From positions 270,816,001 to 270,880,000 of the forward strand of contig CM097882.1 of NCBI GenBank assembly GCA_044892505.1: a stretch of DNA of 64,000 nt, read 5' to 3'. Source of the stretch: Schmidtea nova. Taxonomy: Eukaryota. Position 1 is the stretch's first letter. Every line of letters starts with the position of its first letter. Made by a program: the position numbers and the translations under genes. The notes beneath the pieces are model-generated. The model did no database searches, was not told the DNA's origin, and was given only the letters and a program-made list of their open reading frames with translations. Shown piece by piece: positions 15,070-60,000 of this stretch.

Positions 15070-15239
15070 CATAATTATCTTTTTTCACCTTTGATCTTTT
15101 TTTATTATTATTATCAATAATTCTCATAATGACTATAGATCAAAATTTTTTTTTTATATAAACAATAACACAATATTTCGGCACAGCCTTTATCAAGTGT
15201 GTATTTTGATCTATAGTCATTATGAGAATTATTGATAAT

Positions 15240-15244
<5 letters not shown>
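15066..15244 (-). repeat. Hammerhead-bearing Penelope-like pseudo-LTR repeat, copy 1 (partial fold-back, (TA)n on both sides)
   Basis: Reverse complement of TACACACTTGATAAAGGCTGTGCCGAAATATTGTGT at 15168-15203. 38-bp inverted repeat at 15105-15142 and 15207-15244. Confidence 0.75.
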
Positions 15245-15276
<32 letters not shown>

Positions 15277-22215: not shown

Positions 22216-23031
22216 CATTCTCGGCAAAGAAGCAATGACTACTAAGGGAATCGATAAGACGCTACTATTTTATGTATACGATAATTGAAAGACTTTTCGA
22301 TATCCTTAAGAAGATTTCTTTGTTTGAGTAGGTGCAAAATGAGAGATCTCAGCTTGAGAAACACAAGTTTCAGCTTCTCGAATGTTTGCTAATTTTAAGA
22401 ATTATTTTTTACTACTTTTTTAGTTGTTGTTTTTCAAAGTTTCTCGTAAATTTTAAGTGTAAATTTTATTTAATTATAAATAATATAAATATAATAATCA
22501 ATTAAACTTAGTAATTATGTGTGTGAATTGTTTAACCAATACAATCCCCTTACTGAAATTAACGTAACATTGTTCTAGATTGCTATGCTCAAAGGATAAC
22601 ATTTGCCTGTTACACCTGCAGTCCTGTGTCATTCCTGTTTAACGCTCGTGTTTCCCTCGATTTACGTCTAAGTTTTTTCAAATTTCGACAAACATTAAAC
22701 AGATGACAATTATTAATGTGAATAAATAATATTATAAATTTCTAAACACAGTGCTGTTGCCCACGGCCGTGAGTCGTGTCAATAGGCAACAATTGATGTT
22801 TCTTGATTTTGTTATTTCGGCGAGCGGTGTATGGTCATCCGATAAGGTTACTATTCATTCTTGAATGTGTTAGTCGTTTGTATGCATTTTCCATTTTCAT
22901 ATTTAGGTAATTTTTCCATTTATTTTTTTATTTTTCGTGCTTGTTAATGTATGTGATTTTCAAGTTTCATTTTTTATTTAATTATTTACTCCAATCAAAA
23001 AATGCTAATCCAAGAAAAACTATTAATTTAA

Positions 23032-24750: not shown

Positions 24751-27201
24751 AAAATAAACATAATCGGTGGTTTAGTTCAGAGTACCAATCCTAATTTGGT
24801 ATTAATTGCGTGTGAGATTATAACAATAAATTTATAAGTTTCATAATTCATTAAACGTTAATTTATAATTTCAAATGAATTCATTTATTACATGCAAATG
24901 AACTATTTTTATAGGGACCTCATTTTCCAAATAACCAAGTTAGCTAAAAAACAAACGAAAAGAAAAGCTTTTTTTTTTGGAAGTTAAAATCAAAGTTTTG
25001 GATAGACTAGCCAGAAAAGATGCCACTTCTGTAGGAGAATATTATAATAAATTGAACAGGTATAAATTAAGCATCATTTATAAGTTATAAAATTTAATCT
25101 AATTTATAAAGNNNNNNNNNNNNNNNNNNNNNNNNNNNNNNNNNNNNNNNNNNNNNNNNNNNNNNNNNNNNNNNNNNNNNNNNNNNNNNNNNNNNNNNNN
25201 NNNNNNNNNNNNNNNNNNNNNNNNNNNNNNNNNNNNNNNNNNNNNNNNNNNNNNNNNNNNNNNNNNNNNNNNNNNNNNNNNNNNNNNNNNNNNNNNNNNN
25301 NNNNNNNNNNNNNNNNNNNTTAATTTTAAAATTAACAATTTTGGACAATTAAAAGTTAAATTAGTAAGTAATAATGATAACTAATATTTCATCTAAATAA
25401 TTTAAAATTTTTTAAGCTTAACTTCATTTCTAGAATAACGCATTTTCAATGGAATAAATTAATGCCTACGGAATAAAGCAATGCTTATGAGGTAAAAAAA
25501 TTTAATATAAAATTTATAAATTTTATTAAACTTTATTTATTAAAATATTGATTAAATTATGTTAATTTATTAAATTTCATGTCATTATTTGTAAATTATA
25601 TTGAGTAATAATTATATTTTATTTAAATAGGTATTTTTGGATGATCAAGAATAAGCGACATTTACACCGAACGAGAATAAATTTAATTTAAGGTATTTCT
25701 TAAATAACTTATTTATAAATTATAGATAAGATATAGATACCAAGGTGACTATGATTAATTTATTCTATTTTTAAAATATAATGGAGTATGAAGGGTTTTT
25801 TCACCCTTTATTTATTTAATTGAAGCATGTCAGTGGTTGTGATGGACGACCGTGATCCAACCTAATGGGAGGCCATTGCGATGTTCGATAATTTTGTAAA
25901 CATTTTAAATAAATCATTCATAGGGTTTATGACGATATCTTTTGACACTTTCATGGCATATGAAAAACTACGTTGTGGATGATGTCTTGGTAGATGGCCA
26001 TGCCCAGGTAATTTCGACCCAAACTTCTGGGATTGCAGCGATTACCCTTGTGAACACGATCACTTGCCCAGCATGTATTTTAGGCACAGGCATTTACTAA
26101 CCACTCTTTACTTTATATAAATTAATAATAAATAATAATAATTTAGAAATTAACAATAACAATAATTAGAAAAATATTAATACTTGGAAAAATAGTAAAT
26201 AATAAAGATAATTAATAATAAAGCTTTAAATAAATATGTAATAATAATAATTATAATTGTTCCGGATAAATTTTAATATCTAGCTTTAAATAAAAAGGAT
26301 CGAGGACGAGATCAATGTCATATTTAAGTTTAACAATGTACAGCATTGAGTATTTTCGATGCAAATGTGTATGAGCGGGACTGTTGAGGGATCTAGAGAG
26401 ACTAGAATAATGAACACCATACAATAGAGCCCAATCATGAGTGCTTATTACAAATGAACTGAAAGAAAAATTTCTCATTAAATAATCATTTAAATTAGTT
26501 CGTAGATAATCAAAATACTACTTAAGAAAATCATATTTTTTCTCCATTATCTTTATTAAATTATTTTCATCTATCAAATTCTGATAATGCGAAAATAGAG
26601 CGATACAAATCGTCATTTTGTAAAAACCATTCCAAATTAACTGGGTCTAAAAATCTCTCAAGACCTTTATTTCTTTCTGGACAAATTAATGAACTTGATG
26701 ATTTGATTACATCATCGTTTGGGGTTTTTCGTGATTTTATATAAATAGCACAATTTAAAATTGAGAAAATTTCAGCGAAAATTAATTTTTTATTAAATCT
26801 CCAGTTTCAAAAAATACTGAATTCAAAATCAACTCAACACAACACTATATAACAATAGCACTATATAACACTCAGCGAAAATTTGATTTAAAAAAGCAAC
26901 CAATCCAATTGGTCACAACAAAGAAGAATCACCAACCAACTGGATACACACCAATTTTTATTGGTAAACACAAAGAAAAATACACCAAAAAACTCCGACA
27001 GACCTCAACACACACTATCCATCACATTCAATGCAAAGTCTTTCAAAAAACATTACAAGCGATCAAATCCACAACAATAATAATAATACATTGAAAAAAT
27101 AGTAATTAAAAAAATTTTTGAATAATTAATAATAATATTAAAGATTTAAAGAAACATGTAATAAAAAAATTATTAATTAAAATTATAATTATAATAATAT
27201 G

Positions 27202-27400
27202 TTATTATCAATAATTCTCATAATGACTATAGATCAAATTTTTTTATAAACAATAACACAATATTTCGGCACAGCCTTTATCAAGCTGTGCCGAAATATT
27301 GTGTTATTGTTTATAAAAAAATTTGATCTATAGTCATTATGAGAATTATTGATAATAATAATAAAAAAAGGTCAAAGGTGAAAAAAGATAATTATGATAA
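27202..27400. repeat. Pseudo-LTR repeat copy 2: perfect 74-bp fold-back
   Basis: 27202-27275 is the exact reverse complement of 27285-27358, with a 9-nt loop CTTTATCAA. The right arm continues into the family tail AAAGGTGAAAAAAGATAATTATGATAA. Confidence 0.9.
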
Positions 27401-29109: not shown

Positions 29110-29696
29110 AGCTCCGATTGCTTTCCTCATCAAATTCTGTATTTTTACGAATCTTCTTTTCCTCATAGCTTTTAGCTTCCAACTGTTATCCACCGACCGC
29201 AACAACTCGAATACCAGCTACAAATCCACTGGGATCGGTTTTGAATAACAGTGGCTTATCCATCTCCTTATCATAAGAAAATGCGATCATTGAACAGCCT
29301 AGTGGCATCATTTCAGCTGATTGAGTGTACAATTGATTAATATCGGCAGAACATCGACAAATCATGTCACAGGACATTTCGTAACCAATTTTGCATTTAA
29401 ATTGTGCAGCTTCCATTTGTGCACGGCATACTTGCGATCCGCAATCAGAAATCATTCCGGTCCTATCGCAACCGATACTTTCAGTTATGTTAAATAATCT
29501 TGTAGCTGAACTCCTTTCATTCATTTTATCTGGGACTTTTCTTTGTGTAGTATCTACGCCAATCATTACCTCGAACACCAACAGAAAGTAATCCATCTAA
29601 CGCAATCGCTTTAAATGCATATTCGGCTTGAAATAATCTGCCTTCGGGTGAAAAAATAGTCATATAACGATCAAAAACTCTCGAGCCCAAAGACAT
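29110..29696 (-). pseudogene. PSMA6: Intronless 5' fragment of 20S proteasome alpha-6 (alpha1-type) subunit
   Basis: [31 protein letters not shown]...TQRKVPDK...YTQSAEMMPLGC...KTDPSG. One frameshift near 29570, a stop at ~29186, and truncation before the C-terminus. Confidence 0.92.
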
Positions 29697-29889
29697 TTAA
29701 TTTATTAAATTTTCCAATCCAATTTTATTCGAAAAACATTTTTAATTCCTCAATTTACAATGCAATCAGCTTCCAATAAAATCCAATCTAATAATTCAGA
29801 TCTAATAATGCCATTCAGCAATTTTTTTAAATTAAACTTCCGCCAATTAAAATTAAACAGCTCAGTAAAACAAACTAAAATCCAGTCCA

Positions 29890-31037
29890 ATATTTTTAAT
29901 CAATTTATATTTTCATTATCAGAATTATCTGCTGCTCCTGATAGATCAGATTTAAACACGATGCCTTTTTCAGTTCTGTATTGTATATTTTCAGATTTCG
30001 GAGAACTCAGATCAAGATTTCCAATTGGCTCAGAATTAATAGTACAATTAATTCGATTCTAGTCAAGTCAAATACGACTTATGAGTCAGTATCATCTGCT
30101 GTTGGTTCAATCTCATTATTTACACGTATATCTTCATTGGAATCAACATCTGTCAAAGGATAGTCTAATTTCTTTTCTAAATCAACTTCATCACAGGTAA
30201 TTTCGGATGTTTCGTCGACTAAATTAGAAGTATTAGGTGGAACAATTATTTCGTCGACACTGCTATCTTCAGGAGGATGAGATGTGTCTGAGTGGGACTC
30301 TGATGATACGGGTATTTTCCTTCGCAACCTCGATTTTGATGAAAGTGCTGATAAATCCATGTTTATTGTTAAATTATTTTTTTTCTAATTCTCGTATCTT
30401 CCTTCAATTCTGGTAGCCTTGTAAACAGTAAATGAACAATTCGTTCCAGTGTACATTCTGCTGTGTGCCTCAACAACTCGGATAATTGCGCTTCGAAACA
30501 TATTCTGAAGCAGCTCGATATGATCTTGCATACATCATAATCACTGTTTAAATATCCAGCCGGTACATGCATTAGTGTATCAAGAAGTCGTAATATTTTC
30601 ATTAAAATCACCTCATCTGAGCTATGATCAGTTCCAATAAACTTCGTATTAGTAACTGTATTAGCAACTGCTTCAATAGCGATTTGCAGTGCATCATTAT
30701 CACTGGTCATCGAAATATCTATATATCGAAAACTAAGAAATTTCTCCACAGCAGTCAAAGCTAATCCAGCAATCAATCCAATCATTTCATCGGAACTAAT
30801 TACATCTAGAAATGGTGAGAGAAATTCCAGCGGTTTTAGTTCTGATAGATCATTTATCTGAGATAATGTAGATTTAAGGCTCGATAAATTACTGTACAAC
30901 GGATCTGATATTTCTTCTTGATAAGAACGAATTGCGTTGCCTTTCATTCTTCTTTTCATGGCAGTCATTAATAATCTTACTTCTAATTAAACGACATATT
31001 TAGCATTTTTCTTGCTGGTCATTTAGAATAGATATTG
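29890..31037 (-). pseudogene. GBF1: Intronless 5' fragment of GBF1-type Sec7 Arf-GEF (DCB domain plus linker)
   Basis: FLSPFLDVISSD..GLALTAVEKFLS, GTDHSSDEVILMKIL, CFRICFEAQLSELLRHTAE..LFTRLP. The start ATG ACC AGC AAG lies ~16 nt after the SL. A YRTEKGIVF motif near 29960 parallels the YVNPRGVRF motif of metazoan GBF1. Confidence 0.92.
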
Positions 31038-31078
31038 CATATAAGATTTATATAGATTTCGATAAGACCGTCTAACGG
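31038..31078 (-). other. Planarian spliced-leader exon joined to the GBF1 5' end
   Basis: Minus strand reads CCGTTAGACGGTCTTATCGAAATCTATATAAATCTTATATG (41 nt), matching the triclad SL1 as I recall it. It is followed by CAATATC rather than a GT donor. Confidence 0.9.
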
Positions 31079-31229
31079 TCTTAATACTATATAAACTAAT
31101 ACTATATAAAGGGTTCGAAATTTAGTATACACCATATAAAATTATTTTTAACCTTTTCGAGTTGTCAACTAGTCAAAACCAAGATCAGGATACAAAATAA
31201 AACGATCTACACTGTATTTGGTTGACTTC

Positions 31230-31673
31230 AGCCACGTGCTTTTGATTTTCTGAATATCTTTCATAGCATTCAGTGTCAGCTGTCATCTCTGGAATGTCAC
31301 CTCTCAGTGGCAATGAACCGTTTCCTTCCGATTTTATGAAATCTTTCAAGGCCGCAACAAGAATCCAGAAAGATTTTGACTCGCGGTGAATGTCAATACG
31401 ACAAGGATCCTCTAAAAGAGTCCTGACGTTGATTAGAATCTCAGAAAGAAAAACAGTCATTGGAATTGACTTCCTTGCTTCTCCGAAACTCTTTAAATAT
31501 AGGGATAGGGGTAAGTCCTCTTTTGAGGCGCATAATCTTAGATAATCCTCGCGTCTTTTACTGATCATTTTCCTCAGATATGGTCTGTCTTTATACGAAT
31601 TTGGCCATTTTTCGAACTGAGATTGGAATGAAGTGATAGATTTCATCAAATTGTCTTTTTGATTTACGAGCAT
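31230..31673 (-). pseudogene. NAE1: Intronless internal fragment of NEDD8-activating enzyme regulatory subunit (APPBP1)
   Basis: SFWILVAALKDFIKSEGNGSLPLRGDIPEMTADT parallels APPBP1 [33 protein letters not shown]. Both termini are missing. Confidence 0.88.
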
Positions 31674-31679
31674 CGATTT

Positions 31680-32398
31680 CTACTATCAATTTTATCAATA
31701 TCATTGCCTTCAGATCTATCTTCTATATCATCAAGCATAAGTTTGGGGTTGAACAAAATGCTCGTTCGAAACTTATAACAAAGTTTACAAATTGGAGAAT
31801 TTTGAAGTTTTTCTGTAACAGGTGTTCGACCAACATTCAATTTGCGCCAATAATCACTGTCAGATATCGGTGAATTAAATTGTAGCTTTTCTACAATTAC
31901 TGAAGATCGCACTTTATCAGAAATGATTGAATCTCTCGAAGGCAACAGTGAGGTCTTCGGAACTTCTCGGACAAACGAAATGTCTCAAACAAAAGGTTTT
32001 CTGGCAAAATTCTCTTCTGAATTAAATTTTTGACTAGGGGTCCGCCAATTGAGGAATTCTTGGTTAATAGTAAAAAAGTTTTTCTCGTAAACTTCGAAAA
32101 ATAATTTTGGTAGAGTTCTGCTGAGACAGAATTTTTACCAGATGGTTGTAGGAAATTCTGCTGATTATGATTTTGTGGGCGGTATTTATATCGGGAATTG
32201 CCTGCTGTTTTCGTTGATGCATTTAAACAAATTGTTCTAGAAGGAATTTTCGATTTTTCCAAAATTAAATTTAATAATTTTAAACAAAATTAATTTATTA
32301 TTTTTGTAAATTTTTTTATAAAACTTTAAATAATTTATTTTTAATCTAAAATTTTACTTTTAAATTAAAGTTTTTTCTAATTTAGTTTAATTTACTAA
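31680..32398 (-). repeat. AT-rich leader plus broken ORF of an unidentified repeat family (homolog at 55405-55950)
   Basis: AAATTAAACTAAATTAGAAAAAACTTTAATT...TTCTAGAACAATTTGTTTAAAT(G/A)CATCAA is shared with the plus strand at ~55405-55600. Confidence 0.75.
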
Positions 32399-33430: not shown

Positions 33431-33517
33431 TACACACTTGATAAAGGCTGTGCCGAAATATTGTGTTATTGTTTATAAAAAAAAAATTTTTTGATCTAGT
33501 CATTATGAGAATTATTG

Positions 33518-33597
<80 letters not shown>
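33431..33597 (+). ncRNA. Pseudo-LTR repeat copy 3 with minimal hammerhead-like motif (U3-A8 variant), ending in (TA)n
   Basis: ACAC-TTGATAA-A-GGC(TGT)GCC-GAAA-TATT-GTGT at 33434-33466. Stem I ACAC/GTGT, stem II GGC/GCC, palindromic AATATT stem III. Confidence 0.65.
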
Positions 33598-37450: not shown

Positions 37451-38247
37451 AAAACACCATTCCGTCCCGCACATTAGATGGAATAGACCAAAGAGTTGTG
37501 ATGTTCCCAATAAAGAGAGACCGACGATGGGACGTGAAGAGATATGGAGATGGTCTTCTATTGAATAAGTAGAACCCGCAGCAGAGGCAAGCAGGGAGTA
37601 GTCACCTCAGAGGTCGCTTACCTGCAGACTTGATCTACGTCGTGGTGTACAGCACCAACATGAGAATAAAAGGGTTTCATGGGTACACACTCGTAAGGGA
37701 CGTATTTATGAAAACGTCTACGATAAATTCCCCTGAGACAGAAATGAATTGTAAGAAAACATCAAGTGGCACACCAACAAAACAGGGAAAAAATTTGAAT
37801 TATGTTTTATAAATTTTTATCAGTTCATTTTATCGATGGAAGTGGGACCCCTTGGCCCACTATTACTTGGCTATGTAATTGCATGGCACCCTGCTTAGTA
37901 TAAATTGTCGACATAAATTTATTTACGAATTAAGTTAGTAATATTTTATTATTTCTTCTACGCACTTTAATAATTGAAACCACTTTAAATATTATAGCTA
38001 AATTGACAAATGTTAATGTTATTATTCTATTATATAATTATACAACACCTAACAAATCAATTTATTTTTTATGTCGTGGATCATCAATTCTGACCTACAG
38101 AACAATGACCACGATATTTAAACTTCTAAATCATTGCGGGTCAGTGAACAAAAAAATATTTTTACGATAATATTGATCTTGAATTGTATGATCATAGTTG
38201 ACCCGCCAATAGATTTCATCTTTTGGATTTTACTTTTATGCTGGATT

Positions 38248-38405
38248 ATAAACAATAACACAATATTTCGGCACAGCCTTTATCAAGTGTGTATTTAGGC
38301 TGTATTTAGGCTGTGCCGAAATATTGTGTTATTGTTTATAAAAAAATTTTGATCTATAGTCATTATGAGAATTATTGATAATAATAATAAAAAAAGATCA
38401 AAGGT
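38248..38405. repeat. Pseudo-LTR repeat copy 4, fold-back, running into a gap
   Basis: ATAAACAATAACACAATATTTCGGCACAGCCT, then a spacer, then AGGCTGTGCCGAAATATTGTGTTATTGTTTAT and the family tail. Confidence 0.85.
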
Positions 38406-38538
38406 NNNNNNNNNNNNNNNNNNNNNNNNNNNNNNNNNNNNNNNNNNNNNNNNNNNNNNNNNNNNNNNNNNNNNNNNNNNNNNNNNNNNNNNNNNNNNNN
38501 NNNNNNNNNNNNNNNNNNNNNNNNNNNNNNNNNNNNNN

Positions 38539-39338: not shown

Positions 39339-39689
39339 TTGCACTGTTATATTGGTCTATATAAAAACTTCATAAAAAACTCAGACCTTCCAAAATTTTA
39401 CTGTTTAATTAAAACCCACAAAGGTTCTGCGATTAAAATTAGACCAATTGTATCCAATACAAAAGTTCCAACAACCAAAGTGAGTTGGCTTCTCTCCAAA
39501 ATTCTAAAACCACTGATGGTTCAAGTACCACACCATCTTCAAAGCAGTGACTGTCTTATGTCAAAATTAAATAAAACAGATAAAAACACCAATGCAAAAT
39601 TCAATTATCCCTTTAGCCACAATGTGGTATCCCTATATACCTTTATCCACCCTAAAGATGCTATAGATTGTTTAGAAAGAAAATTTTAA
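39339..39689 (+). mobile_element. Penelope-like RT N-terminal fragment
   Basis: PKFYCLIKTHK..IRPIVSN..PTTKVSWLL..IL.PL...S.NVVSLYT.I...AI, typical of PLE RT motifs 0 to A. Confidence 0.88.
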
Positions 39690-39699
39690 AAAATGTAAA

Positions 39700-41975
39700 C
39701 TTTTCATTACTTAAAATTTCCCAGCCCCCATTTGCATGCATCCAAGGTATAACATTTTTTTGTAACTTTGCAAGTATCCTTTTAGCAATTTTTTTTCAAT
39801 TTCATTGGTTTCATCTTCAGAACATCATCTGCTCTATAAATTATTCTATTCTATTTCAATCAATTCCAGTGGTAAATAAGACATCTAAAACTTCGCCTTC
39901 ATCCGCTTCTTGTCTTATTAATTCTTTAATANNNNNNNNNNNNNNNNNNNNNNNNNNNNNNNNNNNNNNNNNNNNNNNNNNNNNNNNNNNNNNNNNNNNN
40001 NNNNNNNNNNNNNNNNNNNNNNNNNNNNNNNNNNNNNNNNNNNNNNNNNNNNNNNNNNNNNNNTTTTGTGTGTTCGAATAGTTTAGGATACATGATTTTT
40101 ATTAACTCTATTAGAACATCAACGTCCTTATCTTTAATTGACGTTTTGTTTGCAATTTCTTTCCGTTTCTCAGCAATGCTATTATTCTTTGATTTTAGAA
40201 GTCTATTTTCTTTTAACGTTACGGTCATTATACCTCCTATAGCTCCTATTGCGTTTTCTTCATTATCTTGTTCGTCTAGGTCTAATTTTGAAATCTTCTT
40301 GTTGACTACTTCTAAGCCTTTTTTTATTGAAATTGTTATCACGTTATTTCAATAAAATCCCATAATCCATTAAACAATCTTCGTTTTGCATCTTCATCCC
40401 AGAAAAATATAATATTATCTCATCATTTATTCCTAGATCGGCATGCCAATTTGATCTGCCTATGTTTCACATTTTTTACCTTTGTACACGCATGTACCCC
40501 TTGTTTATGAACAATCATTCTAGGCGTATCTTTATCATTTTTTTTCTAATGTTATTTCTAATGGCTCCTGTAATTTTTCATTTTTTCGGACATAATCGTT
40601 TTAACATTTCAACATCTCTTTAATTTCAATTTCCAATTCAAATAATTGTGTTACTCTTTGTTTCCCAACTAATAATGGTATCAAATTTCTCAGATTCTCC
40701 AGATATATTCCTTCTTTCATGAATTTTATTTAATATTCTCAACATTTCATTATTATCTACTATATAATTTCTTAAAGATTCCTCTAATTCCTGTCTCAAA
40801 ATATTTTGTCTATCTAATTCTGCTTAAAATTGTTCATCTCTTTCTATTTGCTGTCTCAACTCTTCATTATCTATCCTGTCTTCATTTGTAAAAATTTTGA
40901 ATTCATTTATCGATACATTAATTTTATTCCTCTCCATTAATCTCTTATATTTTGTTTTAAATTCTTGTAATTGATCTCTCAGCATCTCAATTTCATTATT
41001 CGACTTTAACATCCATAATATTTATTTGTTTAATTTCAGGCTCTTTATTAAATTGAACTCTATTCGGAGATTCGACTCGTGCATTTTTACATGCTTTTGC
41101 CATGTGGCCATATTTTTGACAGTTGAAACATCTTATTTCTCCGCGAAAATTAACTTTATCTCTTCCATCATTACTAAACGGACTCGGTCGCCTATCTCTA
41201 TTAAAGGTTTGTCGAGTAGGACTCATTCTCCTTCCTCTAAAATTGTTTCTATTTATCTCAAAATTGTTTTTATTATCACTTTCTTTTTTCGTCATATCGA
41301 TTTGTTCAAGTATATTCGAAATAATTAACCCTGTTGCTTGGATTATCATTAAAACGATTATTTTTATTGTACACACTATTTCCAAAACGACTATCTCTAT
41401 TATAATTTCCTCGACTCCTACTATCTCGATTATAATAATTATCTCTGTAATTCCCCACATAAGAATTTCTATCATTAAATGCCAAACGATCATTATTCCG
41501 ATTATTCGATCTACCTCTCGAACTACTAGGTCTATTATTGCTATCAAAGCTATGACTCGGACTTGGACTAGCCTTTCTCCTATTTTTAACATAATTTAGA
41601 TATAACTGTTTCATCTCCTCCCTATGAATGTTATCATCCTTATCATTTTTTTTGTTTTTTTGTTTTTCAATTTCCTGAATTTCTACTGCATCAATCACAG
41701 AATTAAATCTATCTCTTTGTATTGCTTCGATTCTTCGTGCCTTTTGTACTAACTCATTTAAATCCTCATATTCTACCATTACCAAAGATTTGTATAAATG
41801 TTTTTGAATAACATTCCAAAATTGGTCCTCAATTAGTCTTGTAGTATGTTCTCACACACCGAAGGCTTTTCGAGCTAATTCGGTTAAATTATAAACATAT
41901 TCTTCAATTGTTTCTTTGCAACCTTAATATCTATTTCGAAATTTTTGTACATTTATCTTTTGTAGATCTCGCTCG
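39700..41975 (-). mobile_element. Decayed gypsy gag-pol
   Basis: Gag with R/N/S-rich tract and knuckle RCFNCQKYGHMAKAC (~41090-41135). Downstream pol remnants include an RT-like YRADDVL near 39825. Confidence 0.8.
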
Positions 41976-47180: not shown

Positions 47181-49955
47181 AAAATAAATGTTATTTGTTT
47201 ACATTTGTTGTTTTTATTAATTGGTACACAATTTCGTTTTCTACCCTACCCAACGCGAGGCACAATTATGGATATCTCACGGGCACCGTCGCGGAGTTTA
47301 CGATTTTATGTTGGTGAAGTTACCCTAATACAAGACCAAACAAAACTCATTCATCAACCACACCAGCAATTGGCAAAATTATATAAGTAATTATTTCATA
47401 GAATAAAATTATTGATTTTAGAGAAGTATCGCTGACTCAACGGAATTTTCGATAGTAAATTATACTCTACTTATTATTTTTACAAACAATTCTATTACGT
47501 CATTTTTTTCATTTACTAGCCGGTTGATTTTTGACTGCGAAATGAATATCAACTTATATTCAGTTATTATTGGGTAATTCTGTGGATTTTATTAGCGTTA
47601 TTTAGAGTAAAACCTTTGTTTTCGCAAAAGTTTTCTAGACTAGATTTCTTGTTAACTTCAAACCGGCATTCGATGCAATATTCTCCATTACATAGCTACA
47701 CTATTTTATGGGTCACAATCAATCCTTAAATTGGGTGGAGACACACTTAAGAAAATATTAACAGGCGAAATGGTAAGCAAATTAAGCTTTGTGTTGTTTT
47801 GGAATTTATATCGTTGATTCTTGAATCGAACATTTATCGTTGTATCTCTGTTTTCTTTCTAAATGAGGTTTTGGTAAACGCAGAAGGAAGACAAATTTAA
47901 TTTGCTGATCCCATGGTCAAATGCATTCAACTTATCAGGATTCGATTTCTCAGAAAAATTTTTGGAATTTATGTTATCCACATGGAATTGATATTGTGAT
48001 AAAAAATTGATTCAGTAGGAGGTAAAGTTTGCTTACTCGTTTAGGTAATTTTCTGTCTCCTAATAATCGTAATTATAATGTTCTTAACAATAAATTTTTG
48101 TCGTTCTTGTAATTGTTTCCTTTTTCTATTTTTTTAAATAACATAAATTAAGTTAAGTTGTGTTCATTATTAGATGGGTTCGTGTGTAATAACATATACT
48201 AGACATTTTATAGGGTTTTATAACACAAATTACACCTTCAGATTAGAGTCAAATTATTATAATCTATCGGTACGGATAGTTTCCCGATGGTGAAATTGTA
48301 GTAGGTTTAGAGAATACCTGGACCAAATGTTAAAAAATTAGTGAGAAATATCGCCTCTCTAACTCCATTTTTTGGAGTCTGTTCGATTTTGTGATTTTGG
48401 ATTCTCATATTCCTTTTTACAATCACATTTGAGTGGGGTCGTATTCCGGGATTTCGTCGACATAATAATGATAGAACAATGATTTATTATTAATGGAAAT
48501 AAATTAAAGGATTCGGCTCTTGTTCGATGTCACACAATTTTAAGTCAACAAACGAATGGAGTACGGCCTGATTTTTTACAACATATTTTTTAAACAATTA
48601 TAATCATTTAGACACACAACGATATATTGATTACCACAAAGTGAGCACATGGTTTCGATGCTTTAATTCGCGCATAATGTTGACTAATAAGCAAACATGT
48701 GGTGGATTCTCGACATTATGCATCCTGGTTGGTACGATAATTCCGCGAAAACCCATTTGTAGGACGATTTTGTTTCGCCCTACCCTGATAAGTAGGTCTC
48801 AAATTATATTTAAGAAAATATTAACTGCTCGGAAGAGACAGGTCCTGTCCTTTCGGACCAGCCCGACTGCAGATGGCACAGACTATTTTCCAACTGTGTT
48901 TTAATATCAGCAGCCCACTAGTCATGATCAGGTACAACACACGAGACAACACACAGGATTAAATTGGGGGATTCGGTTGAATTTGGAGTGTACGGTGAGT
49001 AATCATTCAGCAATATATTGGGAGCATATTAGTGGAGTTTGTTGAAATCTTCGGAGTCCGTGGGTATATCCAGTGAATCGGTATATCAGGCAATCGGTAT
49101 GTAGTTCGTAATTTCAGTATTCAGAATCAGCATAATGGATTAGCATCAGATAACAACATCAGGTAACAAGGCAATCAGGCATCCAGGAAATCGGTTCAGT
49201 CCATCGGTTCATGCAAAGATTCGGAGCTGCATGAACCTTTGGGAGCAGTAGGGTATTTCATTTTGGTAATATATCTATTAAGAATTTCATCTAAAGTCGC
49301 TGGGTTAGGTTGTTANNNNNNNNNNNNNNNNNNNNNNNNNNNNNNNNNNNNNNNNNNNNNNNNNNNNNNNNNNNNNNNNNNNNNNNNNNNNNNNNNNNNN
49401 NNNNNNNNNNNNNNNNNNNNNNNNNNNNNNNNNNNNNNNNNNNNNNNNNNNNNGTCCGATCAGGAAAGGTTTACATGTTAAAATACGTGATGATTTATTG
49501 TTTATTTATTGTATTTTTGATTTATATTTTAGGTTTCCGTTTCACTGGCTAGAGGTACATTCAATGAAACAATTACAAGTACTACTATTTTCGTTTTCAT
49601 TTTCTTATTTCATGTTGATTTTATTGCAGGTTCTTATTCTTTCGGATTCCTGCAATTTTGGATATTATGTATAAAAGGTTATCAATATTTTCTGATTTCT
49701 TATTCATTTTAGATTTTTGTCTTTATTCTATTGAATTATTATATCATTGATAAGTTTATTTATATTTTTAGTCAAATTTTTCTCCTTTTTTTCTTTATTT
49801 GGTCAACCCAACATAAATATTTATTAATAATATATAATAAAAATAAACCTGTTAATTAGAATTGTTTTAAATAATTTTTCAGTATGTTTATTGATAGTTT
49901 TAATAGTAATGAATATACTGTTAAGTGGGTGATAAGAATTTTTTATCTATAATCA

Positions 49956-50020
49956 TCATTATGAGAATTATTGATAATAATAATAAAAAAAGATCAAAGG
50001 TGAAAAAAGATAATTATAAT
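49956..50020 (+). repeat. Pseudo-LTR repeat copy 5 (3' tail only)
   Basis: TCATTATGAGAATTATTGATAATAATAATAAAAAAAGATCAAAGGTGAAAAAAGATAATTAT. Confidence 0.85.
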
Positions 50021-50075
50021 ATTGATTTTTTTTAATAATAATTTCCTGATTATTTAATTAAACCTAAAAAATAAA

Positions 50076-52491: not shown

Positions 52492-55243
52492 CACATTTTA
52501 TCCCAGTGGTGCACCAACGCAACGCATATTTTAGAATTTTTTTTGTTAAGTTCAGTTATGATTTTTAATATCCGTTTACAGATATGATTATTATTGGTAT
52601 TAGACAACTCAATATACCCAAAACTGTAGATTTTCACTTTCAATCAAAAACCCTGTGGCGGCTCAAAATTCAATACACACGCTGTGTAATTTTATGTCAT
52701 AAGTTTTAGCGAAAATGCAACAATAATTTATTTTATTTTTAAACTGTCTTATCATTTTTATTACGTCCATGATATGCAGTTTACATTTTAGAAAAAACGC
52801 ATTTTATTTAACGTTGGTGTTATCTCTTATTTTACTTAAATATTTGGTGATGCGTAAGCGCACCACTGGCTTTATAACTATAACCAATTAGTGCAGGTTT
52901 CGACAAGTTATAGAATGAAATTCGCAGATGCAGTATTTATTTGTGTCTTGTGTTGCGCGGTTGTCGTTTGATTAGAGTTAGTGAAACATGGCATTTTCGA
53001 GGTATTTAACTCATAAAGAATAATTCCTTAGGAATTAGAACCTGCCCTGGAGGAGATTAAGACGGAATTGGAGTATAACAATGAAAGTCGTAAGTACCTG
53101 TATTTACATATTTTTACATGTAAAAAATATTGAACTATTTAGTTTAACTCGAAATTATTGTGTCAATAACGTAACATATTTAGTTACAGAACATGTCGAC
53201 GCCGTTTATATTCCACCCGACGTGGATTCTCTGACCGACGAAGAAACTATGAATGACGAAAGCAATATACGAGAAGTTCAGGAACCACATGATATAGTCG
53301 GAACTTTCGAGTTGCATGTGCCGAATGATACACAGTGTCTCGACTACTCCAGCACTTTGCCTACTGCCGCACCTGCATCTGATTTTGATTCATCAGATGA
53401 TGAAACACTGGAATCCAAAAGAAGACGCCTGTTGCCTGCAAACCTCCACCTAGCTTTCTGAATGGAAAAAGGGTCAGATTGAATATACTCACACACCTAC
53501 ATCAGAAGAGTTTCGATCATGTGAAGAACTAAAAAATAATCTTTCGGGAAAATCGCTTCTTGAACTATTTTTCGCGTTTTTCGATGACGAAGTGTTTGAC
53601 TTAATTTTAAATTTTTTACTAAAATATGCTCAAGACAATAACCGCCATAAATTTTCATTTTCAAAAAACGAACTTATAATTTTATAGGAATTTTACTGTT
53701 TTCCGGTTTTTATTCATTACCACATATTCAACATTACTGGTCTACTGATGAAGACAAAGGAATCGATATTATCAAGAAATGTATGAGACGAAATAGATTT
53801 CAATCTATAAAACAGAACTTAAATTTATCTGACATTAATCTGTTAGATAAAAATGATAAATATGCAAAACTTAGACCCTTTTTCGATGTTATAAATAACA
53901 AAAGATTACAATTTGGAATATTTGCATTCAACTTATCCATAGATGAACAAATGGTTCCCTACTTTGGACGACACTCGTTTAAAATGTTCATAAAGGGTAA
54001 GCCAGTCCGTTTTTGTTTCAAGGTTTGGTGCCTTTGTTCATATGATGGGTATCTTTTTTATTCACTTCCATATGGTGGTTCAGGAAATGTCATTCATTCT
54101 GCCCTCGGTCTTGGTGGTGACGTGGTTATGAGTCTACTTTCTGTGATAGATAAACCGGTAAATCACCAAATTTTTTTCGATAATTTCTTTTCATCATTTA
54201 AACTTTTTGCACATTTAAAAAATAAAGGTTTTTTTGCCACCGGTACTTTCCGAGAAAATAGAACAAATAAGTGTTAATAGAAAACAGTAAATCATTTGGT
54301 AAAAAGGATCGTGGTTCCTATATTTCAACATATGAATCTTACTTAAAAGTTTCTATTTTACGATGGAATGATAATTCGGTTGTAACAGTAGCAAGTAACA
54401 TTTATAGAATAGATCCTATTCATAAGGTAAAACGCTATAATAGAAAAGAACGACGAGATGTATATCTACCCCAACCTAATGTCATTTTTCAGTACAATAA
54501 ATATATGGGTGGGGTAGACTTACATGACAACGGAATTGCAAATTATAGGTGCCAAGTATTTGGGAAAAATGGTGGTGGCCTTTATTTTGTAATAAATTAG
54601 ATAGCTTAGTAGTAAATGCATGGAAAATTTATAATATTGTTAACGAAAATAAAATATCGCAGATATATTTTAAATCTTACATAGCGTTGCGACTTTTAAA
54701 AACTGATAAAACAATAACCATAAAAAACCTTGCTCCAGCCATAGATGAACTCCGTTATGATAATAAAGGCCACCTTATGATTTGTCATGCTAATAAAGCT
54801 CGATGAAGGTGTAGAATTTGCCATAGTCACACAATTTACATTTGCAGAAAGTGTAACGTACATTTACATACGCCATGCTTCGTACAATATCATCAAAAAT
54901 AATTCGGGATTTTCCCAGTGGTTTGCTCGTGCACTAACAATTATTGCACTGTTTTGTATCAGATAAGGTCTTAGGTAAAAAATATTTTAATTTTAATTTT
55001 TTATCTAAGGTAAACGCTTTTGTATTACATGTTAGTTGAAATTATTAATTATTTGTTAAATGTTCGAAAATAATATTTCATGTTTCTGCCCAGTGGTTCG
55101 TTTACGCACCAGTGGTTTTTGGCGTACATTTCAAACTTTTATTTGTTTTTACTAGTTATATATATTCTTAAAGGTTCCAAAATAAATATTTTCTAACTGT
55201 AGTGTTCGTTTTACTGACATTTCTACCTTTGGGATAATATGGG
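52492..55243 (+). mobile_element. Full-length piggyBac (PGBD-like), nested in the Penelope 3' region
   Basis: TTAA at 52488-91 and 55244-47. TIRs CACATTTTATCCCA and TGGGATAATATGGG, 12/14 match. Confidence 0.92.
52988..54902 (+). pseudogene. piggyBac transposase with probable 5' intron, several frameshifts
   Basis: VDAVYIPPDVDSLTDEE, SIDEQMVPYFGRH, FFDNFFSS, GGVDLHDN, and a Cys-rich tail ICHSHTIYICRKCNVHLH..C. GTAAGT donor at 53090 with AG at 53183 or 53189. Confidence 0.9.
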
Positions 55244-55404: not shown

Positions 55405-55950
55405 TTTAAATTAAACTAAATTAGAAAAAACTTTAATTCAAAAGTAAAATTTTGGATTAAAAATAAATTATTTAAAGTTTTATTAAAATTTTATGCAAAA
55501 ATAATATTTCAATTTTGCTTAACATTATTAAAATTAATTTTAAAAGTCGAAAATTCTTTCTAGAACAATTTGTTTAAATACATCAATGGAAACAACAAAC
55601 AGAACATCCTATAAATACTGCCATCAAAATGAAAAGGATCAGAATTTACTTGAAAAATTTTGACAAATTTCTGCGAAAGTGAAATCTTTGAAGAACTTTT
55701 ACACTGCCAAGTGAGTAAAACTGATAAAGGCGAACCTTTCGAAAATTTCCAGAAACAATCAATCAGTTTCCGACTTAGACAATCCAGAAGTTTTGCGGAA
55801 ATCCAAGATATGCACTCGTGATTTCAGACGGACACGATCCATTCGACTTCCAACCTCGTTTGAACCAAGCAGACGAGTAATTATCTTGAATTTTCTATTG
55901 TGTAGGCTAGCGAATCATGTCTTCGTTACCCTGTTGTAGGTACTTTATTT
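55405..55950 (+). repeat. Homolog of the 31.7-32.4 kb segment, directly after the Penelope pseudo-LTR
   Basis: Shared ~220-bp leader. Broken frame METTNRTSYKYCHQNEKDQNLL parallels TKTAGNSRYKYRPQNHNQQNFL. Confidence 0.7.
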
Positions 55951-56550
55951 GAGTTTTCAATTTTTATTTGAATGTTAGTCATGTGTTATTATATAATTTA
56001 ATATGTTATGGAAATTATAATTTTTCTATTTTATTTTCGTCACATTTTCTCATAAATTAATATCATCCTATTATCATTTATGTATTTATATACATATCAA
56101 TATTATTTCTCATTATAACCACTTCTATACTTTCTGAAGTCAGTCCGGCCATGAGTTTTATATAATGAAATAAAAAGAATAAAATAAAATAAATGAAAAA
56201 AGCTAAATGTTTTTCTGATTTAATAAAATAATAAGCTCATTAATACGCTGATTTTTTTAAAGTTTATACATCCATAAAAACTAAGCAATATAATTACTTC
56301 TCTGCTCAATAGAAGCCCAATAGCTACTCCCTGATTAACTATTATGATAAATTACTAAACTACTTTTCGCTATATTCTTTCTTTCGGGTTCCTGTTGCCG
56401 ATAGAATGACTTATGCATCTATTTACTTTAAGGTTCTGTCACATGAGTCGAATCTTAACTTTCTATCGCCTTACTCTATCCAGCACCTATGCTTGTTTAA
56501 TATGAATAATCCCACTTCAATTTCTCGGGTATATTTACCTTTTCCCTCAA

Positions 56551-56713
56551 ATCTCTATTTTATTATAAAAGCCCAATTTTATTATAAAAGCTCAATTTTA
56601 TTTAAAAAGCTCAATTTTATTTAAAAAGCTCAATTTTATTTAAAAATCTCTATCTTATTTAAAAATCTCTATTTTATTTAAAAAAGCTCTATTTTATTTA
56701 AAAAGCTCAATTT
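56551..56713. repeat. ~19-bp minisatellite, about 8-9 units
   Basis: Variants of AAAAGCTCAATTTTATTTA in tandem. Confidence 0.85.
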
Positions 56714-57069
56714 CACTCATATATCATAAAACATCAACAGATGGTTCAATAAATTCCATCTGTCCAAATTTCAATAGACCTAGATCGGTGAATTACGGTG
56801 TACCGGGTCGTGCGACCAAGTGTGTTTTCTTCTGATTTTTTAAATATATTTTACTTTATCTCCTTAACTCTTATCACCAGTTGGCTAGTAGTGGGTCTGC
56901 GGGGTTCCAGATGCGTAAAATTTAGCATTTAAAGTAGTAAGTAGTTCTATAAAATTATAACCCTCTAAAAATCAAATTATTGGAAGTCATTTATCCAGGT
57001 AACTTATTCAGTTTTTTGTTTTAGGGTCTTACTGATAGGACCATTAAGCATTTAATTTTTTTTGGATTT

Positions 57070-60000
57070 TGTGTTTTAAAAAAATGTTTAAAAATACTCT
57101 AAAGATTTTTATAGAATTCTTTTAATAAAAAAGTGTTTTGCAAAGAAAACATCTGGTTTAAAATAAAAATAATTATCAAGTAAAGATTTTAATAATTAAA
57201 ATATTTAAAATCAAATTTAAAATTTACAATAAAAAATTTTATTAAAGTTTTTATTAAATATATAGGTTTATTAAAATATAGTTGAAATTAATAAAAATCG
57301 TATGTTGAATATATGTATGAATGTTTGAAATTCTGTCAAGAAAAATTACATATTTATTTGAATCTTCTAACGTTGTTTAAATAATTGTGGTAAAAATACA
57401 GTTTTTAAATTTTTTAAATTTTATTATTAATTTAATTATCGATGCAATTAACACCCGAAGTTCGGTAAAAGTTGATACTAACATGGTGACCACGCTTTTG
57501 GCAAATTTTGTCGAACAACCGAAACATTTCGAAATGGGCCAAGATATCCACAAGTTCAAAGCAGATATAGAACGTTTCTTCTAGATATTACATATCGAAG
57601 GCAGATTAAGAAATAACTTTGTGAGAGCATTCTTATCCAGAAGACCACCGAACTTTACGATGAGATAACATCAGAAAACTTATTAATGCGTTTTCGAAAC
57701 CATCAACGTTAATCGAAGATCTGAAAGAAGCTCTGAATTATACGAAAGGAGAAGATAGAGTTAAAGATTATTGGAGGAAACTGGGAAAATTACCAGATGG
57801 TATCCTCAAACATAAGATGGATAAAGATACGTTAATGAAGTTTCAATTGTTCCACACATTGTATGATAAGGAGATGAAATACGATCTCAAAATCTAAGAT
57901 ATAAAGCCTATCGGAGAAATAAAAGCGAGAATGGAGAAATTAGAAAAGATTAAATACGAGTTAAACGAAACCTACAGACCAATTGCAGTGATTTTAAGGA
58001 GAATATTTGCTGATACAGTTAAAATTCAGAATACGGAGAACAATATGCTTGGTGCAAAAAGTAAATTTTCAAATCAAAACACTCTTAGACGTGAAGGTAA
58101 ACGCTGGGAGGGTAATAAACAAAGCTTTTACTCAAGGACAAATTGTTTACGTCAAGGAAATCGGGTACAAGATAATCCATATAAAGGATATAACTACAAT
58201 GGATATAGCAACGACCAGAAAAGAAAAAATATAAAGATGAGGAAGATAGCCAACGGAGAACAAACCAGTGCTTGGCATGCATAGAATGAGGCCAAAATGT
58301 CCAAATGTCCAATGTACACTGCCATAAACAAGGACATTTCAAACATCAATGTTTTGCAATGAATAACTACAGATCCAGAGGACAGGTTGCCGGTATGGAA
58401 GAAAACTATATGGATGACAACTACGAGGACCAGATACTGAGCCCAAATGCCAAAGTTTTGTGATGGAGGAGTGTACAAAAGCACAGGACTAAAAGTATGT
58501 AATATTCTTGACAGAAACTGTATGTATGCGAATGATTGTGATTGTATGTTTGATTTTTGTGATTTTAATAGTAAATATTTGAATAATACAACTAGTACTT
58601 TTTTTAATATAAATAATATTTGTGAATTAAATAGAAATAGTATATCTGAATATAACTCTCAAAATAGCAAATGTATAAGTTTACTAAATGAAATTAACAG
58701 CCACTATTATGCAAGTGGAAGTAGTAGTGAAGAAAGATTACTAACAATTGATTCAAGCATGTGTTCGATGAATGACAAGGATTCAATTATCAGATATGAT
58801 GCTATGGGAGGCAGACCGAGCGTTAATGTTACTATGAATGGTATATGTTTAAGATGTTTCCTTGACACAGGAGCAAATATCAGCGTCATAGATCGCCATA
58901 TGATTGAGAAATGTTATGTGAATAATGTCAAAAAGAGTAATATGAAAGTAAAATGTGCAAATCACAGTCGCCTTAATATTGTTGGAACTATTGTGATAAA
59001 AATTAAAATTCAGGGAATAAAAGAAGGTAAATATATACAATTTTATATAGCAGATGAAATTAGACCTCAACTGATTGGTGGAATGAACTTCCTGGATGAA
59101 TTTGGAATCATGTTGAATATCTATGATTGTATAAATGATAGTCTGATTCGTACGACAAAGTTATTGAAATTGTCGGTAAATTTCATATAAGAAGGAATTA
59201 CTGAAAGGAAAGTTGAAGATATGGTAATTAATAAACTAATAAACAAATAAGACAATGTTTTTATTAAACATAAGTGGGATGTGGGGAAAATTGACTTAAT
59301 GAAAAACGAAATAATTACTGCGAGCAAATCTATAGCACTCAACTCAAGAAGACAACTGGCTCATCTACTGGATAAAATCAATGAACAAATAAAACAAATG
59401 GAAAGGCTTGGTATTATCAAGGAATGTGAATCATCATGGAATGCACCATTAGTATGTGTGAAGAAAAAAAGGAAAGATGATATTAGAACATGTTTAGACT
59501 TTAGAGCACTAAATAACGTAGCAGAACGACCGGTGTTCCCAATGCCAAACACGAATGAATTATTAGATGTTTTGAATGAATCAAAGTATTTTTCAACAAT
59601 CGATCTCGGAAATGCATATTATCAAGTTGAACTAGAAGAAGAGTCTAAAGTTAAAATGGCATTTTCAACTAAAAATAAGCAGTATTGTTTTAATAGAATG
59701 CATTATGAGCATTATAGATCGATAGAAAAAGTATTTCTGAAGATTTAAAAAGTGGGATTTAAAGTCAGCCCGGAAAAGTGCTTTTCTAAAAGAAAAGAAA
59801 TTAAATTTGTGGGGAATATAATAAATAAAGAAGGTATTCAGACGGATCCTAATAAAATTAAGGCAATAAAATAATTTAATAGACTGAAATGCTAAAAGAA
59901 TTAAGAACTTTCTTTGGACTAGCCAATTATTACAGGAAATTCATTCAAGATTATACCAAACATGCAAAAGTCTTGGAAGGTCTTTGTGGAAGCAATCAAA

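What the first reader, a model, noticed from the sequence alone, without database searches (positions are those of the whole stretch)
31038..31078. Planarian spliced leader embedded in genomic DNA, fused to the GBF1 5' end
Seen: 41 nt ending in ...CTTATATG, then ~16 nt, then the GBF1 start codon, with no GT donor after the leader. Knowledge: this matches the triclad SL1 as I recall it. It identifies the host lineage, shows that GBF1 is trans-spliced, and is strong evidence that a capped mature mRNA was copied to its very 5' end and integrated.
Basis: partly seen in the sequence, partly recalled or inferred. Interest (0 to 1): 0.8.

Follow-up and report, generated by a model that had tools for sequence, protein, structure and literature searches.

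The report
Spliced-leader-tagged GBF1 retro-pseudogene fragment
A flatworm-type spliced leader, which is normally added to mRNA only after transcription, sits in the DNA directly in front of a broken, intron-free 5' piece of the GBF1 gene, so a trans-spliced mRNA was copied back into the genome; it is a dead fragment of a kind already known from other organisms.

Summary
A 41-nt leader (31078->31038) ends in CTTATATG. It is followed by CA rather than a GT donor, then 15 nt, then the GBF1 start codon at 31022.

The leader has the architecture of published flatworm spliced leaders. I could not check identity to planarian SL1, because no held paper prints that sequence.

Behind the leader is only the first ~210-330 codons of GBF1. 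This stretch has no introns; the Capitella orthologue has six introns by the end of the same stretch. It carries a TAA at conserved codon 12 and a frameshift. No other GBF1 domain occurs anywhere in the 64 kb.

So this is a dead retrocopy of the 5' part of a trans-spliced mRNA. It is neither the gene nor an SL RNA gene.

It has no poly(A) tail and is truncated at the 3' end, so it is not an L1-type copy. On the same strand it lies between an intron-free NAE1 fragment and a broken, intron-free PSMA6 fragment. My best guess, which is an inference, is one chimeric cDNA made by reverse-transcriptase template switching.

SL-tagged retrocopies are already known from dinoflagellates, nematodes and parasitic flatworms. 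This is a new member of a known kind, of moderate to low interest.

The parts
31038..31078 (-). 41-nt spliced-leader sequence (CCGTTAGACGG...CTTATATG), followed by CA, not GT
   Evidence: sequence and uniqueness. (shares the ACCG-N5-CGGTCTTA core and the ...TATG end with published cestode SLs). (5' hairpin).
31079..31083 (-). TAAGA: 5 nt upstream of the leader that extend its hairpin to a perfect 9-bp palindrome (TAAGACCGT-TAG-ACGGTCTTA). Origin unexplained.
31023..31037 (-). 15-nt remainder of the GBF1 5' UTR between the trans-splice junction and the start codon (CAATATCTATTCTAA). The leader's own ATG is in frame with the GBF1 ATG and is closed by the TAA of this stretch.
30390..31022 (-). 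GBF1 residues 1-~211 (DCB domain), uninterrupted by introns. TAA at codon 12 (30987-30989) replaces a conserved Q.
   Evidence: Pfam DCB, 1.2e-08. (Gea2/ARF-GEF, 1.7e-15). (173 GBF1 proteins align to 31022->30390 only). (89% to P0001). (Capitella introns).
30377..30384 (-). A8 homopolymer where the reading frame shifts relative to P0001. This may be a real indel or a homopolymer assembly error.
30082..30376 (-). Probable continuation of GBF1 mRNA: a basic then acidic/Ser-rich linker (NNLTINMDLSALSSKSRLRRK...), ending in TAA at 30079-30081. Weak support only.
   Evidence: orthologues have ...MD(P)SR..(K/R)KKRSPK at the same place. (no significant alignment).
31188..31673 (-). Intron-free fragment of the NEDD8-activating enzyme E1 regulatory subunit (NAE1/APPBP1), matching about residues 262-342 of 534. 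It lies just upstream of the leader on the same strand.
   Evidence: PDB 3gzn_A, 1.8e-12. Extensions further upstream were not verified.
29189..29696 (-). Intron-free proteasome alpha-6 (PSMA6) fragment starting at Met1. Frameshift near 29560 and TAA at 29186-29188.
   Evidence: Proteasome_A_N 5e-12; Proteasome 6e-23. (PSMA6 residues 49-169, 2e-36).. The C-terminal part was not verified.

Best explanation
This is a dead retrocopy of the 5' part of a spliced-leader trans-spliced GBF1 mRNA.

Proposed sequence of events:
1. GBF1 pre-mRNA received the leader at an acceptor 15 nt upstream of its start codon, and its introns were removed.
2. A cellular reverse transcriptase copied the mRNA from an internal point, about 0.7-1.0 kb from the 5' end, up to or very near that end.
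3. The cDNA was integrated.
4. The copy has since decayed: a TAA at codon 12 and a frameshift in an A8 run.

It is neither the GBF1 gene nor an SL RNA gene.

It is 5'-complete, 3'-truncated and has no poly(A). It lies head-to-tail between an NAE1 fragment and a PSMA6 fragment that starts at Met1. I therefore infer that all three were joined in one cDNA. On this model the enzyme ran to the 5' end of one mRNA and continued at an internal site of the next. This is template switching, as in LTR-retrotransposon-mediated chimeric retrocopies.

What is shown: the leader-CDS junction without a donor; the absence of introns; the disabling mutations; the absence of the rest of GBF1; and the neighbouring fragments.

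What is inferred: the RNA intermediate, the single event, and the type of reverse transcriptase.
For: - Leader directly joined to the GBF1 5' UTR and CDS, followed by CA rather than GT. Unique in the window.
- The leader has the flatworm SL core and terminal ATG. PMC12582326 states that all reported flatworm SLs end in ATG.
- GBF1 homology is confined to 31022->30390. No HUS, Sec7 or HDS domain occurs anywhere in the 64 kb.
- Residues 1-211 are uninterrupted, whereas the Capitella gene has introns after residues 35, 57, ~100, 142, 177 and 205.
- TAA at conserved Q12 and a frameshift.
- A second decayed copy exists (P0001, 89% identical, lacking the conserved VIL of SDEVILMKI).
- The NAE1 fragment and the PSMA6 fragment with a frameshift and a stop lie on the same strand within 2.5 kb.
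- No A-run of 9 or more lies in 27-33 kb.
- Genomic loci that carry an SL because trans-spliced transcripts were reverse-transcribed are reported for flatworm genomes. Partial, multi-gene, poly(A)-less retrocopies formed by template switching are documented.
Against: - Identity to the host's own SL could not be checked. No published planarian SL text was available, and there were no hits in the DNA collections.
- No parental GBF1, NAE1 or PSMA6 sequence of the host could be obtained. The breakpoints, microhomology and ages of the three fragments are therefore unknown.
- No LTRs or LTR-element ORFs flank the row directly.
- 106 nt between NAE1 and the leader (31079-31184) and 385 nt between GBF1 and PSMA6 (29697-30081) are unassigned.
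- The frameshift lies in a homopolymer and could be an assembly error.
- Intron absence was tested only against an annelid orthologue.
Confidence: 0.72

Rival explanations
1. Three independent retro-insertions (NAE1, SL-GBF1, PSMA6) landed next to each other, for example in an insertion hotspot, rather than forming one chimeric cDNA.
For: The region is dense with transposable elements. Unassigned spacers of 106 and 385 nt separate the fragments. P0001 shows that GBF1 5' fragments exist in more than one copy, and it diverges from the window copy after ...NNLTIN.
Against: All three lie on the same strand within 2.5 kb. None has a poly(A) tail. At least two are 5'-complete and 3'-truncated. That is the opposite of what independent LINE-type insertions give (features listed).
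Confidence: 0.15
2. A cDNA of SL-GBF1 recombined with a genomic SL RNA gene through the 41-nt leader. On this reading the sequence upstream of the leader is the SL RNA gene's own flank or promoter.
For: The hairpin palindrome continues 5 nt upstream of the recalled leader start. TATATAG motifs lie 14 and 29 nt upstream.
Against: The genome is about 70% A+T, so TATA-like strings are common. No SL RNA gene flank was available for comparison. An NAE1 fragment lies only 106 nt upstream.
Confidence: 0.05
3. Assembly artefact: cDNA or chimeric library molecules were built into the scaffold.
For: The row is made only of cDNA-like pieces. N gaps lie at 25112-25319 and 38406-38538.
Against: The pieces carry a stop, frameshifts and about 11% amino-acid divergence from another copy. 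They lie in 13 kb of gap-free sequence that also holds interspersed genomic repeats (MITE copies at 27202-27358 and 33433-33545).
Confidence: 0.04
4. It is the first exon of the functional GBF1 gene, or a functional retrogene, with a genome-encoded leader.
For: The ORF starts at the orthologous Met1 and the DCB domain is well preserved.
Against: TAA at codon 12 and a frameshift. No HUS, Sec7 or HDS coding sequence occurs in the 31 kb downstream or anywhere else in the window. A PSMA6 pseudogene follows within 1.3 kb.
Confidence: 0.02
5. It is an SL RNA gene or SL RNA pseudogene that lies upstream of a GBF1 fragment by chance.
For: It contains the complete leader with its 5' hairpin.
Against: There is no GT donor. 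There is no Sm-site or intron part; coding sequence follows instead. No RNA family hit was found. In published flatworm SL RNAs the donor is AUG|GU.
Confidence: 0.02

Closest known systems
Genomic loci sharing the SL sequence in parasitic flatworm genomes (PMC12582326), with reference to Heterodera (Barnes et al. 2019)
   Same: The SL sequence lies in DNA without the SL RNA features. [quoted passage not shown] Same phylum.
   Different: Most loci reported there carry partial leaders associated with LTR or LINE elements. Here a complete leader is joined to a host housekeeping mRNA fragment in a free-living flatworm-type genome.
DinoSL-tagged retrogenes of dinoflagellates (Slamovits and Keeling 2008; review PMC6050394)
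   Same: A post-transcriptionally added leader that is encoded in DNA upstream of a gene serves as a tag for retroposition.
   Different: Those are mostly expressed, surviving genes, often re-spliced with a new leader. This is a truncated, disabled fragment in an animal genome.
LTR-retrotransposon-mediated chimeric retrocopies (Tan et al. 2016, PMC5131818; maize Bs1)
   Same: Partial mRNA copies with no poly(A) tail, several parental genes joined in one locus, and possible secondary amplification.
   Different: The defining flanks of LTR-retrotransposon sequence were not found next to the row. Microsimilarity at the junctions could not be tested.
L1/LINE-type processed pseudogenes
   Same: Intron-free and disabled; derived from mRNA.
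   Different: No poly(A) tail and no recognisable target-site duplication. It is 3'-truncated and 5'-complete rather than 5'-truncated (features listed).
Published flatworm spliced leaders (e.g. Hymenolepis microstoma SL1, Echinococcus SL; Table S1 of PMC12582326)
   Same: A 5' hairpin ACCG-N5-CGGT, then C(C)TTA, and a 3' end ...CTT(G/A)TATG with a terminal ATG.
   Different: 41 nt against 33-38 nt. It has an A/T-rich insert in the middle and TATATG instead of TGTATG. It is not identical to any listed SL.

Membership tests
Planarian (triclad) SL1 leader | Sequence identity to the published Schmidtea/triclad SL1 | not testable with these tools
No held paper prints it.
Planarian (triclad) SL1 leader | Found at the 5' ends of many unrelated mRNAs of the host | not testable with these tools
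   No planarian transcripts could be fetched. The leader is absent from metagenome and prokaryote collections.
Flatworm spliced leaders in general | 3'-terminal ATG | tested here: met
   The leader ends ...TATATG. All reported flatworm SLs end in ATG.
Flatworm spliced leaders in general | 5' hairpin ACCG-loop-CGGT followed by C(C)TTA | tested here: met
   ACCGTTAGACGGTCTTA is present. The pattern has 0.01 expected matches in the window. The best alignment score against 8 published SLs is reached by only 5 of 5000 random 43-mers. Hairpin fold.
SL RNA gene | GT splice donor immediately after the leader | tested here: not met
   The leader is followed by CA. The published donor is AUG|GU.
SL RNA gene | Intron part with an Sm-like site (..UUUGG) and hairpins downstream | tested here: not met
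   What follows is the GBF1 5' UTR and CDS. No Rfam hit.
Retrocopy / processed pseudogene of an mRNA | Carries a mark added only to RNA (the spliced leader) at the mRNA's 5' end | tested here: met
   The leader is joined 15 nt upstream of the orthologous start codon.
Retrocopy / processed pseudogene of an mRNA | Lacks the introns of the parental gene | tested here: inconclusive
   Uninterrupted over residues 1-211, where the Capitella orthologue has 6 introns. The host's parental gene was not available.
Retrocopy / processed pseudogene of an mRNA | Disabling mutations / no selection | tested here: met
   TAA at conserved Q12, and a frameshift in the A8 run.
L1/LINE-type (target-primed) retrocopy | 3' poly(A) tail, target-site duplication, 5' truncation | tested here: not met
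   No A-run of 9 or more in 27-33 kb. The copy is 5'-complete and 3'-truncated. No flanking duplication that is specific to the row.
LTR-mediated chimeric retrocopy | Partial mRNA copies from more than one parental gene joined in one locus | tested here: met
   NAE1, GBF1 and PSMA6 fragments lie on the same strand within 2.5 kb.
LTR-mediated chimeric retrocopy | Flanked by LTR-retrotransposon sequence including both LTRs | tested here: not met
   The only LTR pair in the window is 57084-57484 / 61632-62020. The row is flanked by MITE-like palindromes that also occur elsewhere in the window.
LTR-mediated chimeric retrocopy | Microsimilarity at the switch points | not testable with these tools
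   This needs the parental mRNA sequences, which could not be obtained.
Functional GBF1 gene | Intact ORF with HUS, Sec7 and HDS domains | tested here: not met
   Only residues 1-~211 are present in the 64 kb. Stop at codon 12.

The most novel reading that the evidence does not exclude
The NAE1 / SL-GBF1 / PSMA6 row is a single concatemer made by serial 'run-off and jump' reverse transcription. Each time the enzyme reached the capped 5' end of one mRNA, it continued at an internal site of another. The leader marks one such run-off to within a few nucleotides. The 5-nt extension of the leader's hairpin may record a snap-back at that step. The composite may since have been copied again, since a second GBF1 5' copy (P0001) exists. 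If so, it would be a natural in vivo record of end-to-end template jumping in a planarian, and a route to multi-gene chimeras.
Probability: 0.25. Interest if true: 0.55.

Novelty: new member of a known kind. Interest (0 to 1): 0.35.

Why it matters
A leader encoded in DNA without a donor is an unambiguous tag for RNA-derived DNA, so it can be used to catalogue retrocopies in flatworm genomes independently of intron loss.

This case also records that GBF1 mRNA was trans-spliced 15 nt upstream of its ATG at the time of copying.

It further shows a retrocopy type that is not LINE-like: 5'-complete, 3'-truncated, poly(A)-less and multi-gene. That bears on which reverse transcriptases make retrocopies in planarians.

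For annotation, it warns that this locus, and P0001-like gene models, are pseudogene fragments and not GBF1.

Tried and rejected
1. Finding the published planarian SL as text. Sequence-string searches, Rossi 2014, Zayas 2005, Cheng 2006, the S. polychroa genome paper with its supplements, and several flatworm SL papers all failed. Either the paper was not held or the sequence appears only in figures.

2. Exact leader searches in metagenome and prokaryote genome contigs gave nothing.

3. Fetching the host's real GBF1 transcript.
- The word search found only P0001 as a close relative, and P0001 has no contig on record.
- The representative search gave at most ~50% identical GBF1 proteins.
- A profile search led by a mollusc GBF1 returned 120 non-flatworm GBF1 proteins. 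With hindsight this was a poor use of an expensive search.

4. The NAE1 piece found no relatives of 90-287 aa.

5. Extending the NAE1, PSMA6 and GBF1 fragments by Pfam, PDB or BLAST gave no significant support. My by-eye matches are therefore not claimed.

6. The ~75-nt repeats at 27.2 and 33.4 kb as terminal repeats of a transposon carrying the row: rejected as specific boundaries, because the same MITE-like family occurs at 15.1, 38.3 and 49.9 kb.

7. The reading that 32127-32394 is the NAE1 N-terminus: left open. The segment has an 82% copy at 55407-55673 beside a piggyBac element.

8. Rfam found no family at or near the leader.

N runs were left as they are. Nothing in the window looked human.

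Full report
OBSERVATION

On the minus strand, window 31078->31038 reads CCGTTAGACGGTCTTATCGAAATCTATATAAATCTTATATG. It is followed by CAATATCTATTCTAA (15 nt) and then ATG at 31022-31020. The bases after the leader are CA, so there is no GT donor.

The 41-mer and its 3' 19-mer occur only once in the 64 kb, with 0 and 0.19 matches expected.

IS IT A SPLICED LEADER?

I could not find the planarian SL in any text that the tools hold. Sequence strings gave no relevant paper. Zayas 2005, Rossi 2014 and Cheng 2006 are not held. The S. polychroa paper shows its SL alignment only as a figure.

What could be tested is the family resemblance. Table S1 of PMC12582326 lists the known SLs of parasitic flatworms.
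- The cestode leaders read (C)ACCG-N5-CGGTC(C)TTAC...TTGTATG. The window has (G)ACCG-TTAGA-CGGTCTTAT...CTTATATG.
- The best global score against eight published SLs is reached by 5 of 5000 random 43-mers of the window, and by 8 of 2208 43-mers that end in ATG.
- The core pattern has 0.01 expected matches.
- All reported flatworm SLs end in ATG, as this one does.
- The 5' end folds into the expected hairpin.

It is not an SL RNA gene. The published donor is AUG|GU, whereas here coding sequence follows. Rfam finds nothing.

WHAT FOLLOWS THE LEADER

The ORF behind it is the N-terminal DCB domain of GBF1/Gea (Pfam PF16213, 1.2e-08; yeast Gea2 / ARF-GEF structures, 1.7e-15).

A tblastn of 173 full-length GBF1 proteins against the whole window matches only 31022->30390, from residue 1 to about 206. 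Nothing matches HUS, Sec7 or the HDS domains on either strand. The window therefore holds a 5' fragment and not the gene.

The orthologues and P0001 start there (MTSK.NAKYVVQLE). However, codon 12 is TAA where all of them have Q. The frame also shifts in an A8 run at 30377-30384. The homopolymer indel could be an assembly error, but the TAA substitution is not of that kind.

After the shift the sequence continues NNLTINMDLSALSSKSRLRRK... and then turns acidic and Ser-rich, up to a TAA at 30079. Orthologues have ...MD(P)SR..(K/R)KKRSPK at this position, so this is probably still GBF1 mRNA. No alignment there is significant.

The annotated Capitella GBF1 gene has introns after residues 35, 57, ~100, 142, 177, 205 and 282. 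The window copy has none over residues 1-211.

The only close relative in 5.8 billion clustered proteins is P0001 (UniParc UPI0005FFA701, no organism given). It is 89% identical over residues 1-211, and it lacks the invariant VIL of SDEVILMKI. At least two decayed copies of this GBF1 5' piece therefore exist. They diverge after ...NNLTIN. I cannot tell whether that point is an intron, a different breakpoint or a gene-model artefact.

NEIGHBOURS

On the same strand, 106 nt upstream of the leader, ORF 31673->31188 matches NAE1/APPBP1 residues 262-342 of 534 (1.8e-12).

385 nt downstream of the GBF1 piece, 29696->29189 is PSMA6 from Met1 (Proteasome_A_N 5e-12 and Proteasome 6e-23; PSMA6 residues 49-169, 2e-36). 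It has no introns, a frameshift near 29560 and a TAA at 29186-29188.

So three unrelated housekeeping genes, each as an intron-free partial copy, stand head-to-tail within 2.5 kb. There is no A-run of 9 or more between 27 and 33 kb. No LTR pair and no LTR-element ORF lies beside the row. The only LTR pair in the window is at 57.1/61.6 kb.

The ~150-nt palindromic repeats at 27202-27358 and 33433-33545 that bracket the segment belong to a MITE-like family. The family is also present at 15.1, 38.3 and 49.9 kb, so they are not specific boundaries of the row.

MECHANISM

Shown by the sequence:
- a leader that only RNA acquires, joined without a donor to the start of an intron-free, disabled piece of a gene;
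- the absence of the rest of that gene from the window.

Inferred:
- A trans-spliced GBF1 mRNA was reverse-transcribed from an internal position to its 5' end and integrated.
- The fragment is 5'-complete, 3'-truncated and poly(A)-less. That is the reverse of target-primed LINE retrocopies (features listed).
- The fragment fits template switching, in which partial copies of several mRNAs are joined (Tan et al. 2016).
- In mRNA sense, a reverse transcriptase that finishes PSMA6 at its 5' end, re-starts inside GBF1 mRNA, finishes that at the leader, and re-starts inside NAE1 mRNA would give exactly the order and orientation seen here.

This single-event reading is my best guess, at about even odds. 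It is not demonstrated. The parental sequences needed to place the breakpoints were not obtainable, and the flanking LTR-element sequence that defines the LTR-mediated class was not found.

AN UNEXPLAINED DETAIL

The leader's hairpin is part of a perfect 9-bp palindrome, TAAGACCGT-TAG-ACGGTCTTA (31083->31063). Five of its bases lie upstream of the 41 nt. There are three possibilities:
- the real SL RNA begins a few bases earlier than recalled;
- the cDNA end snapped back on the hairpin and was extended;
- it is chance, at roughly 1 in 1000.

For this reason 'copied to its very 5' end' is left open.

COMPARISON AND NOVELTY

Leaders encoded in DNA as tags of retroposition are well known in dinoflagellates. 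The 2025 survey of parasitic flatworm genomes explicitly sets aside loci that share the SL because trans-spliced transcripts were reverse-transcribed and integrated, citing dinoflagellate and Heterodera precedents.

This locus is therefore a new member of a known kind. It is a clear example with a complete leader on a host mRNA fragment, in what is most likely a planarian genome. The multi-gene, poly(A)-less row adds some interest.

The claims of exact SL1 identity and of host lineage remain unverified. The 'mature mRNA' is only a 5' fragment of a pseudogene.

HOUSEKEEPING

N runs (6028-6184, 10635-10785, 25112-25319, 38406-38538, 39932-40063, 49316-49453) were left untouched.

Noticed in passing
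window 31063-31083 (minus strand): The leader's hairpin is a perfect 9-bp palindrome, TAAGACCGT-TAG-ACGGTCTTA, that reaches 5 nt upstream of the 41-nt leader. Just upstream lies a 15-nt near-repeat, TATATAGTATTAGTT / TATATAGTATTAAGA (31079-31108).
   Followed up: partly
window 27202-27358; also 15103-15246, 33433-33545, 38246-38341, 49912-50042: A family of ~150-nt palindromic MITE/foldback-like repeats. The copy at 27202-27358 has 74-nt arms that are 100% complementary. The copy at 33433 is a half element followed by a (TA)n run.
   Followed up: partly
window 32127-32394 (minus) and 55407-55673 (plus): A 270-nt A/T-rich segment is present twice at 82% identity in opposite orientation. One copy lies just upstream of the NAE1 fragment. 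The other lies ~440 nt downstream of the last ORF (ending 54966) that follows the piggyBac transposase remnant. Whether it is the NAE1 5' end or a transposon end is unresolved.
   Followed up: partly
window 53783-54600 (+): piggyBac-type transposase (DDE_Tnp_1_7, 2.6e-34) split over at least two frames, i.e. decayed.
   Followed up: partly
window 57084-62020 (+): A compact LTR retrotransposon: ~400-nt LTRs at 92% identity, with aspartyl protease, RT, RNase H and integrase zinc-finger pieces in several ORFs.
   Followed up: partly
window 2108-3931 (+): A 607-aa ORF with a hAT C-terminal dimerisation domain at the Pfam threshold. This is the longest ORF in the window.
   Followed up: no
window 12622-12958 and 22284-22603: An inverted repeat pair of ~340 nt (85% identity), 9.3 kb apart, enclosing decayed gypsy-like protease/RT pieces at 19.4-20.3 kb.
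   Followed up: no
window 39339-39689 (+) and 40996-41592 (-): An ORF with RT-like motifs (LPKFYCLIKTHK...IRPIVS) but no Pfam hit, and a low-complexity ORF with a CCHC zinc knuckle. Both sit next to N gaps.
   Followed up: no
window 56520-56749: A tandem array of a 19-nt unit (TTTTATTTAAAAAGCTCAA-like), about 12 copies.
   Followed up: no
P0001 (UniParc UPI0005FFA701): A 278-aa predicted protein. It is the only close relative of the window's GBF1 piece in the protein collections and looks like a gene model built on another decayed GBF1 5' copy: a 3-aa deletion in an invariant motif, and an unrelated tail after residue 220.
   Followed up: partly
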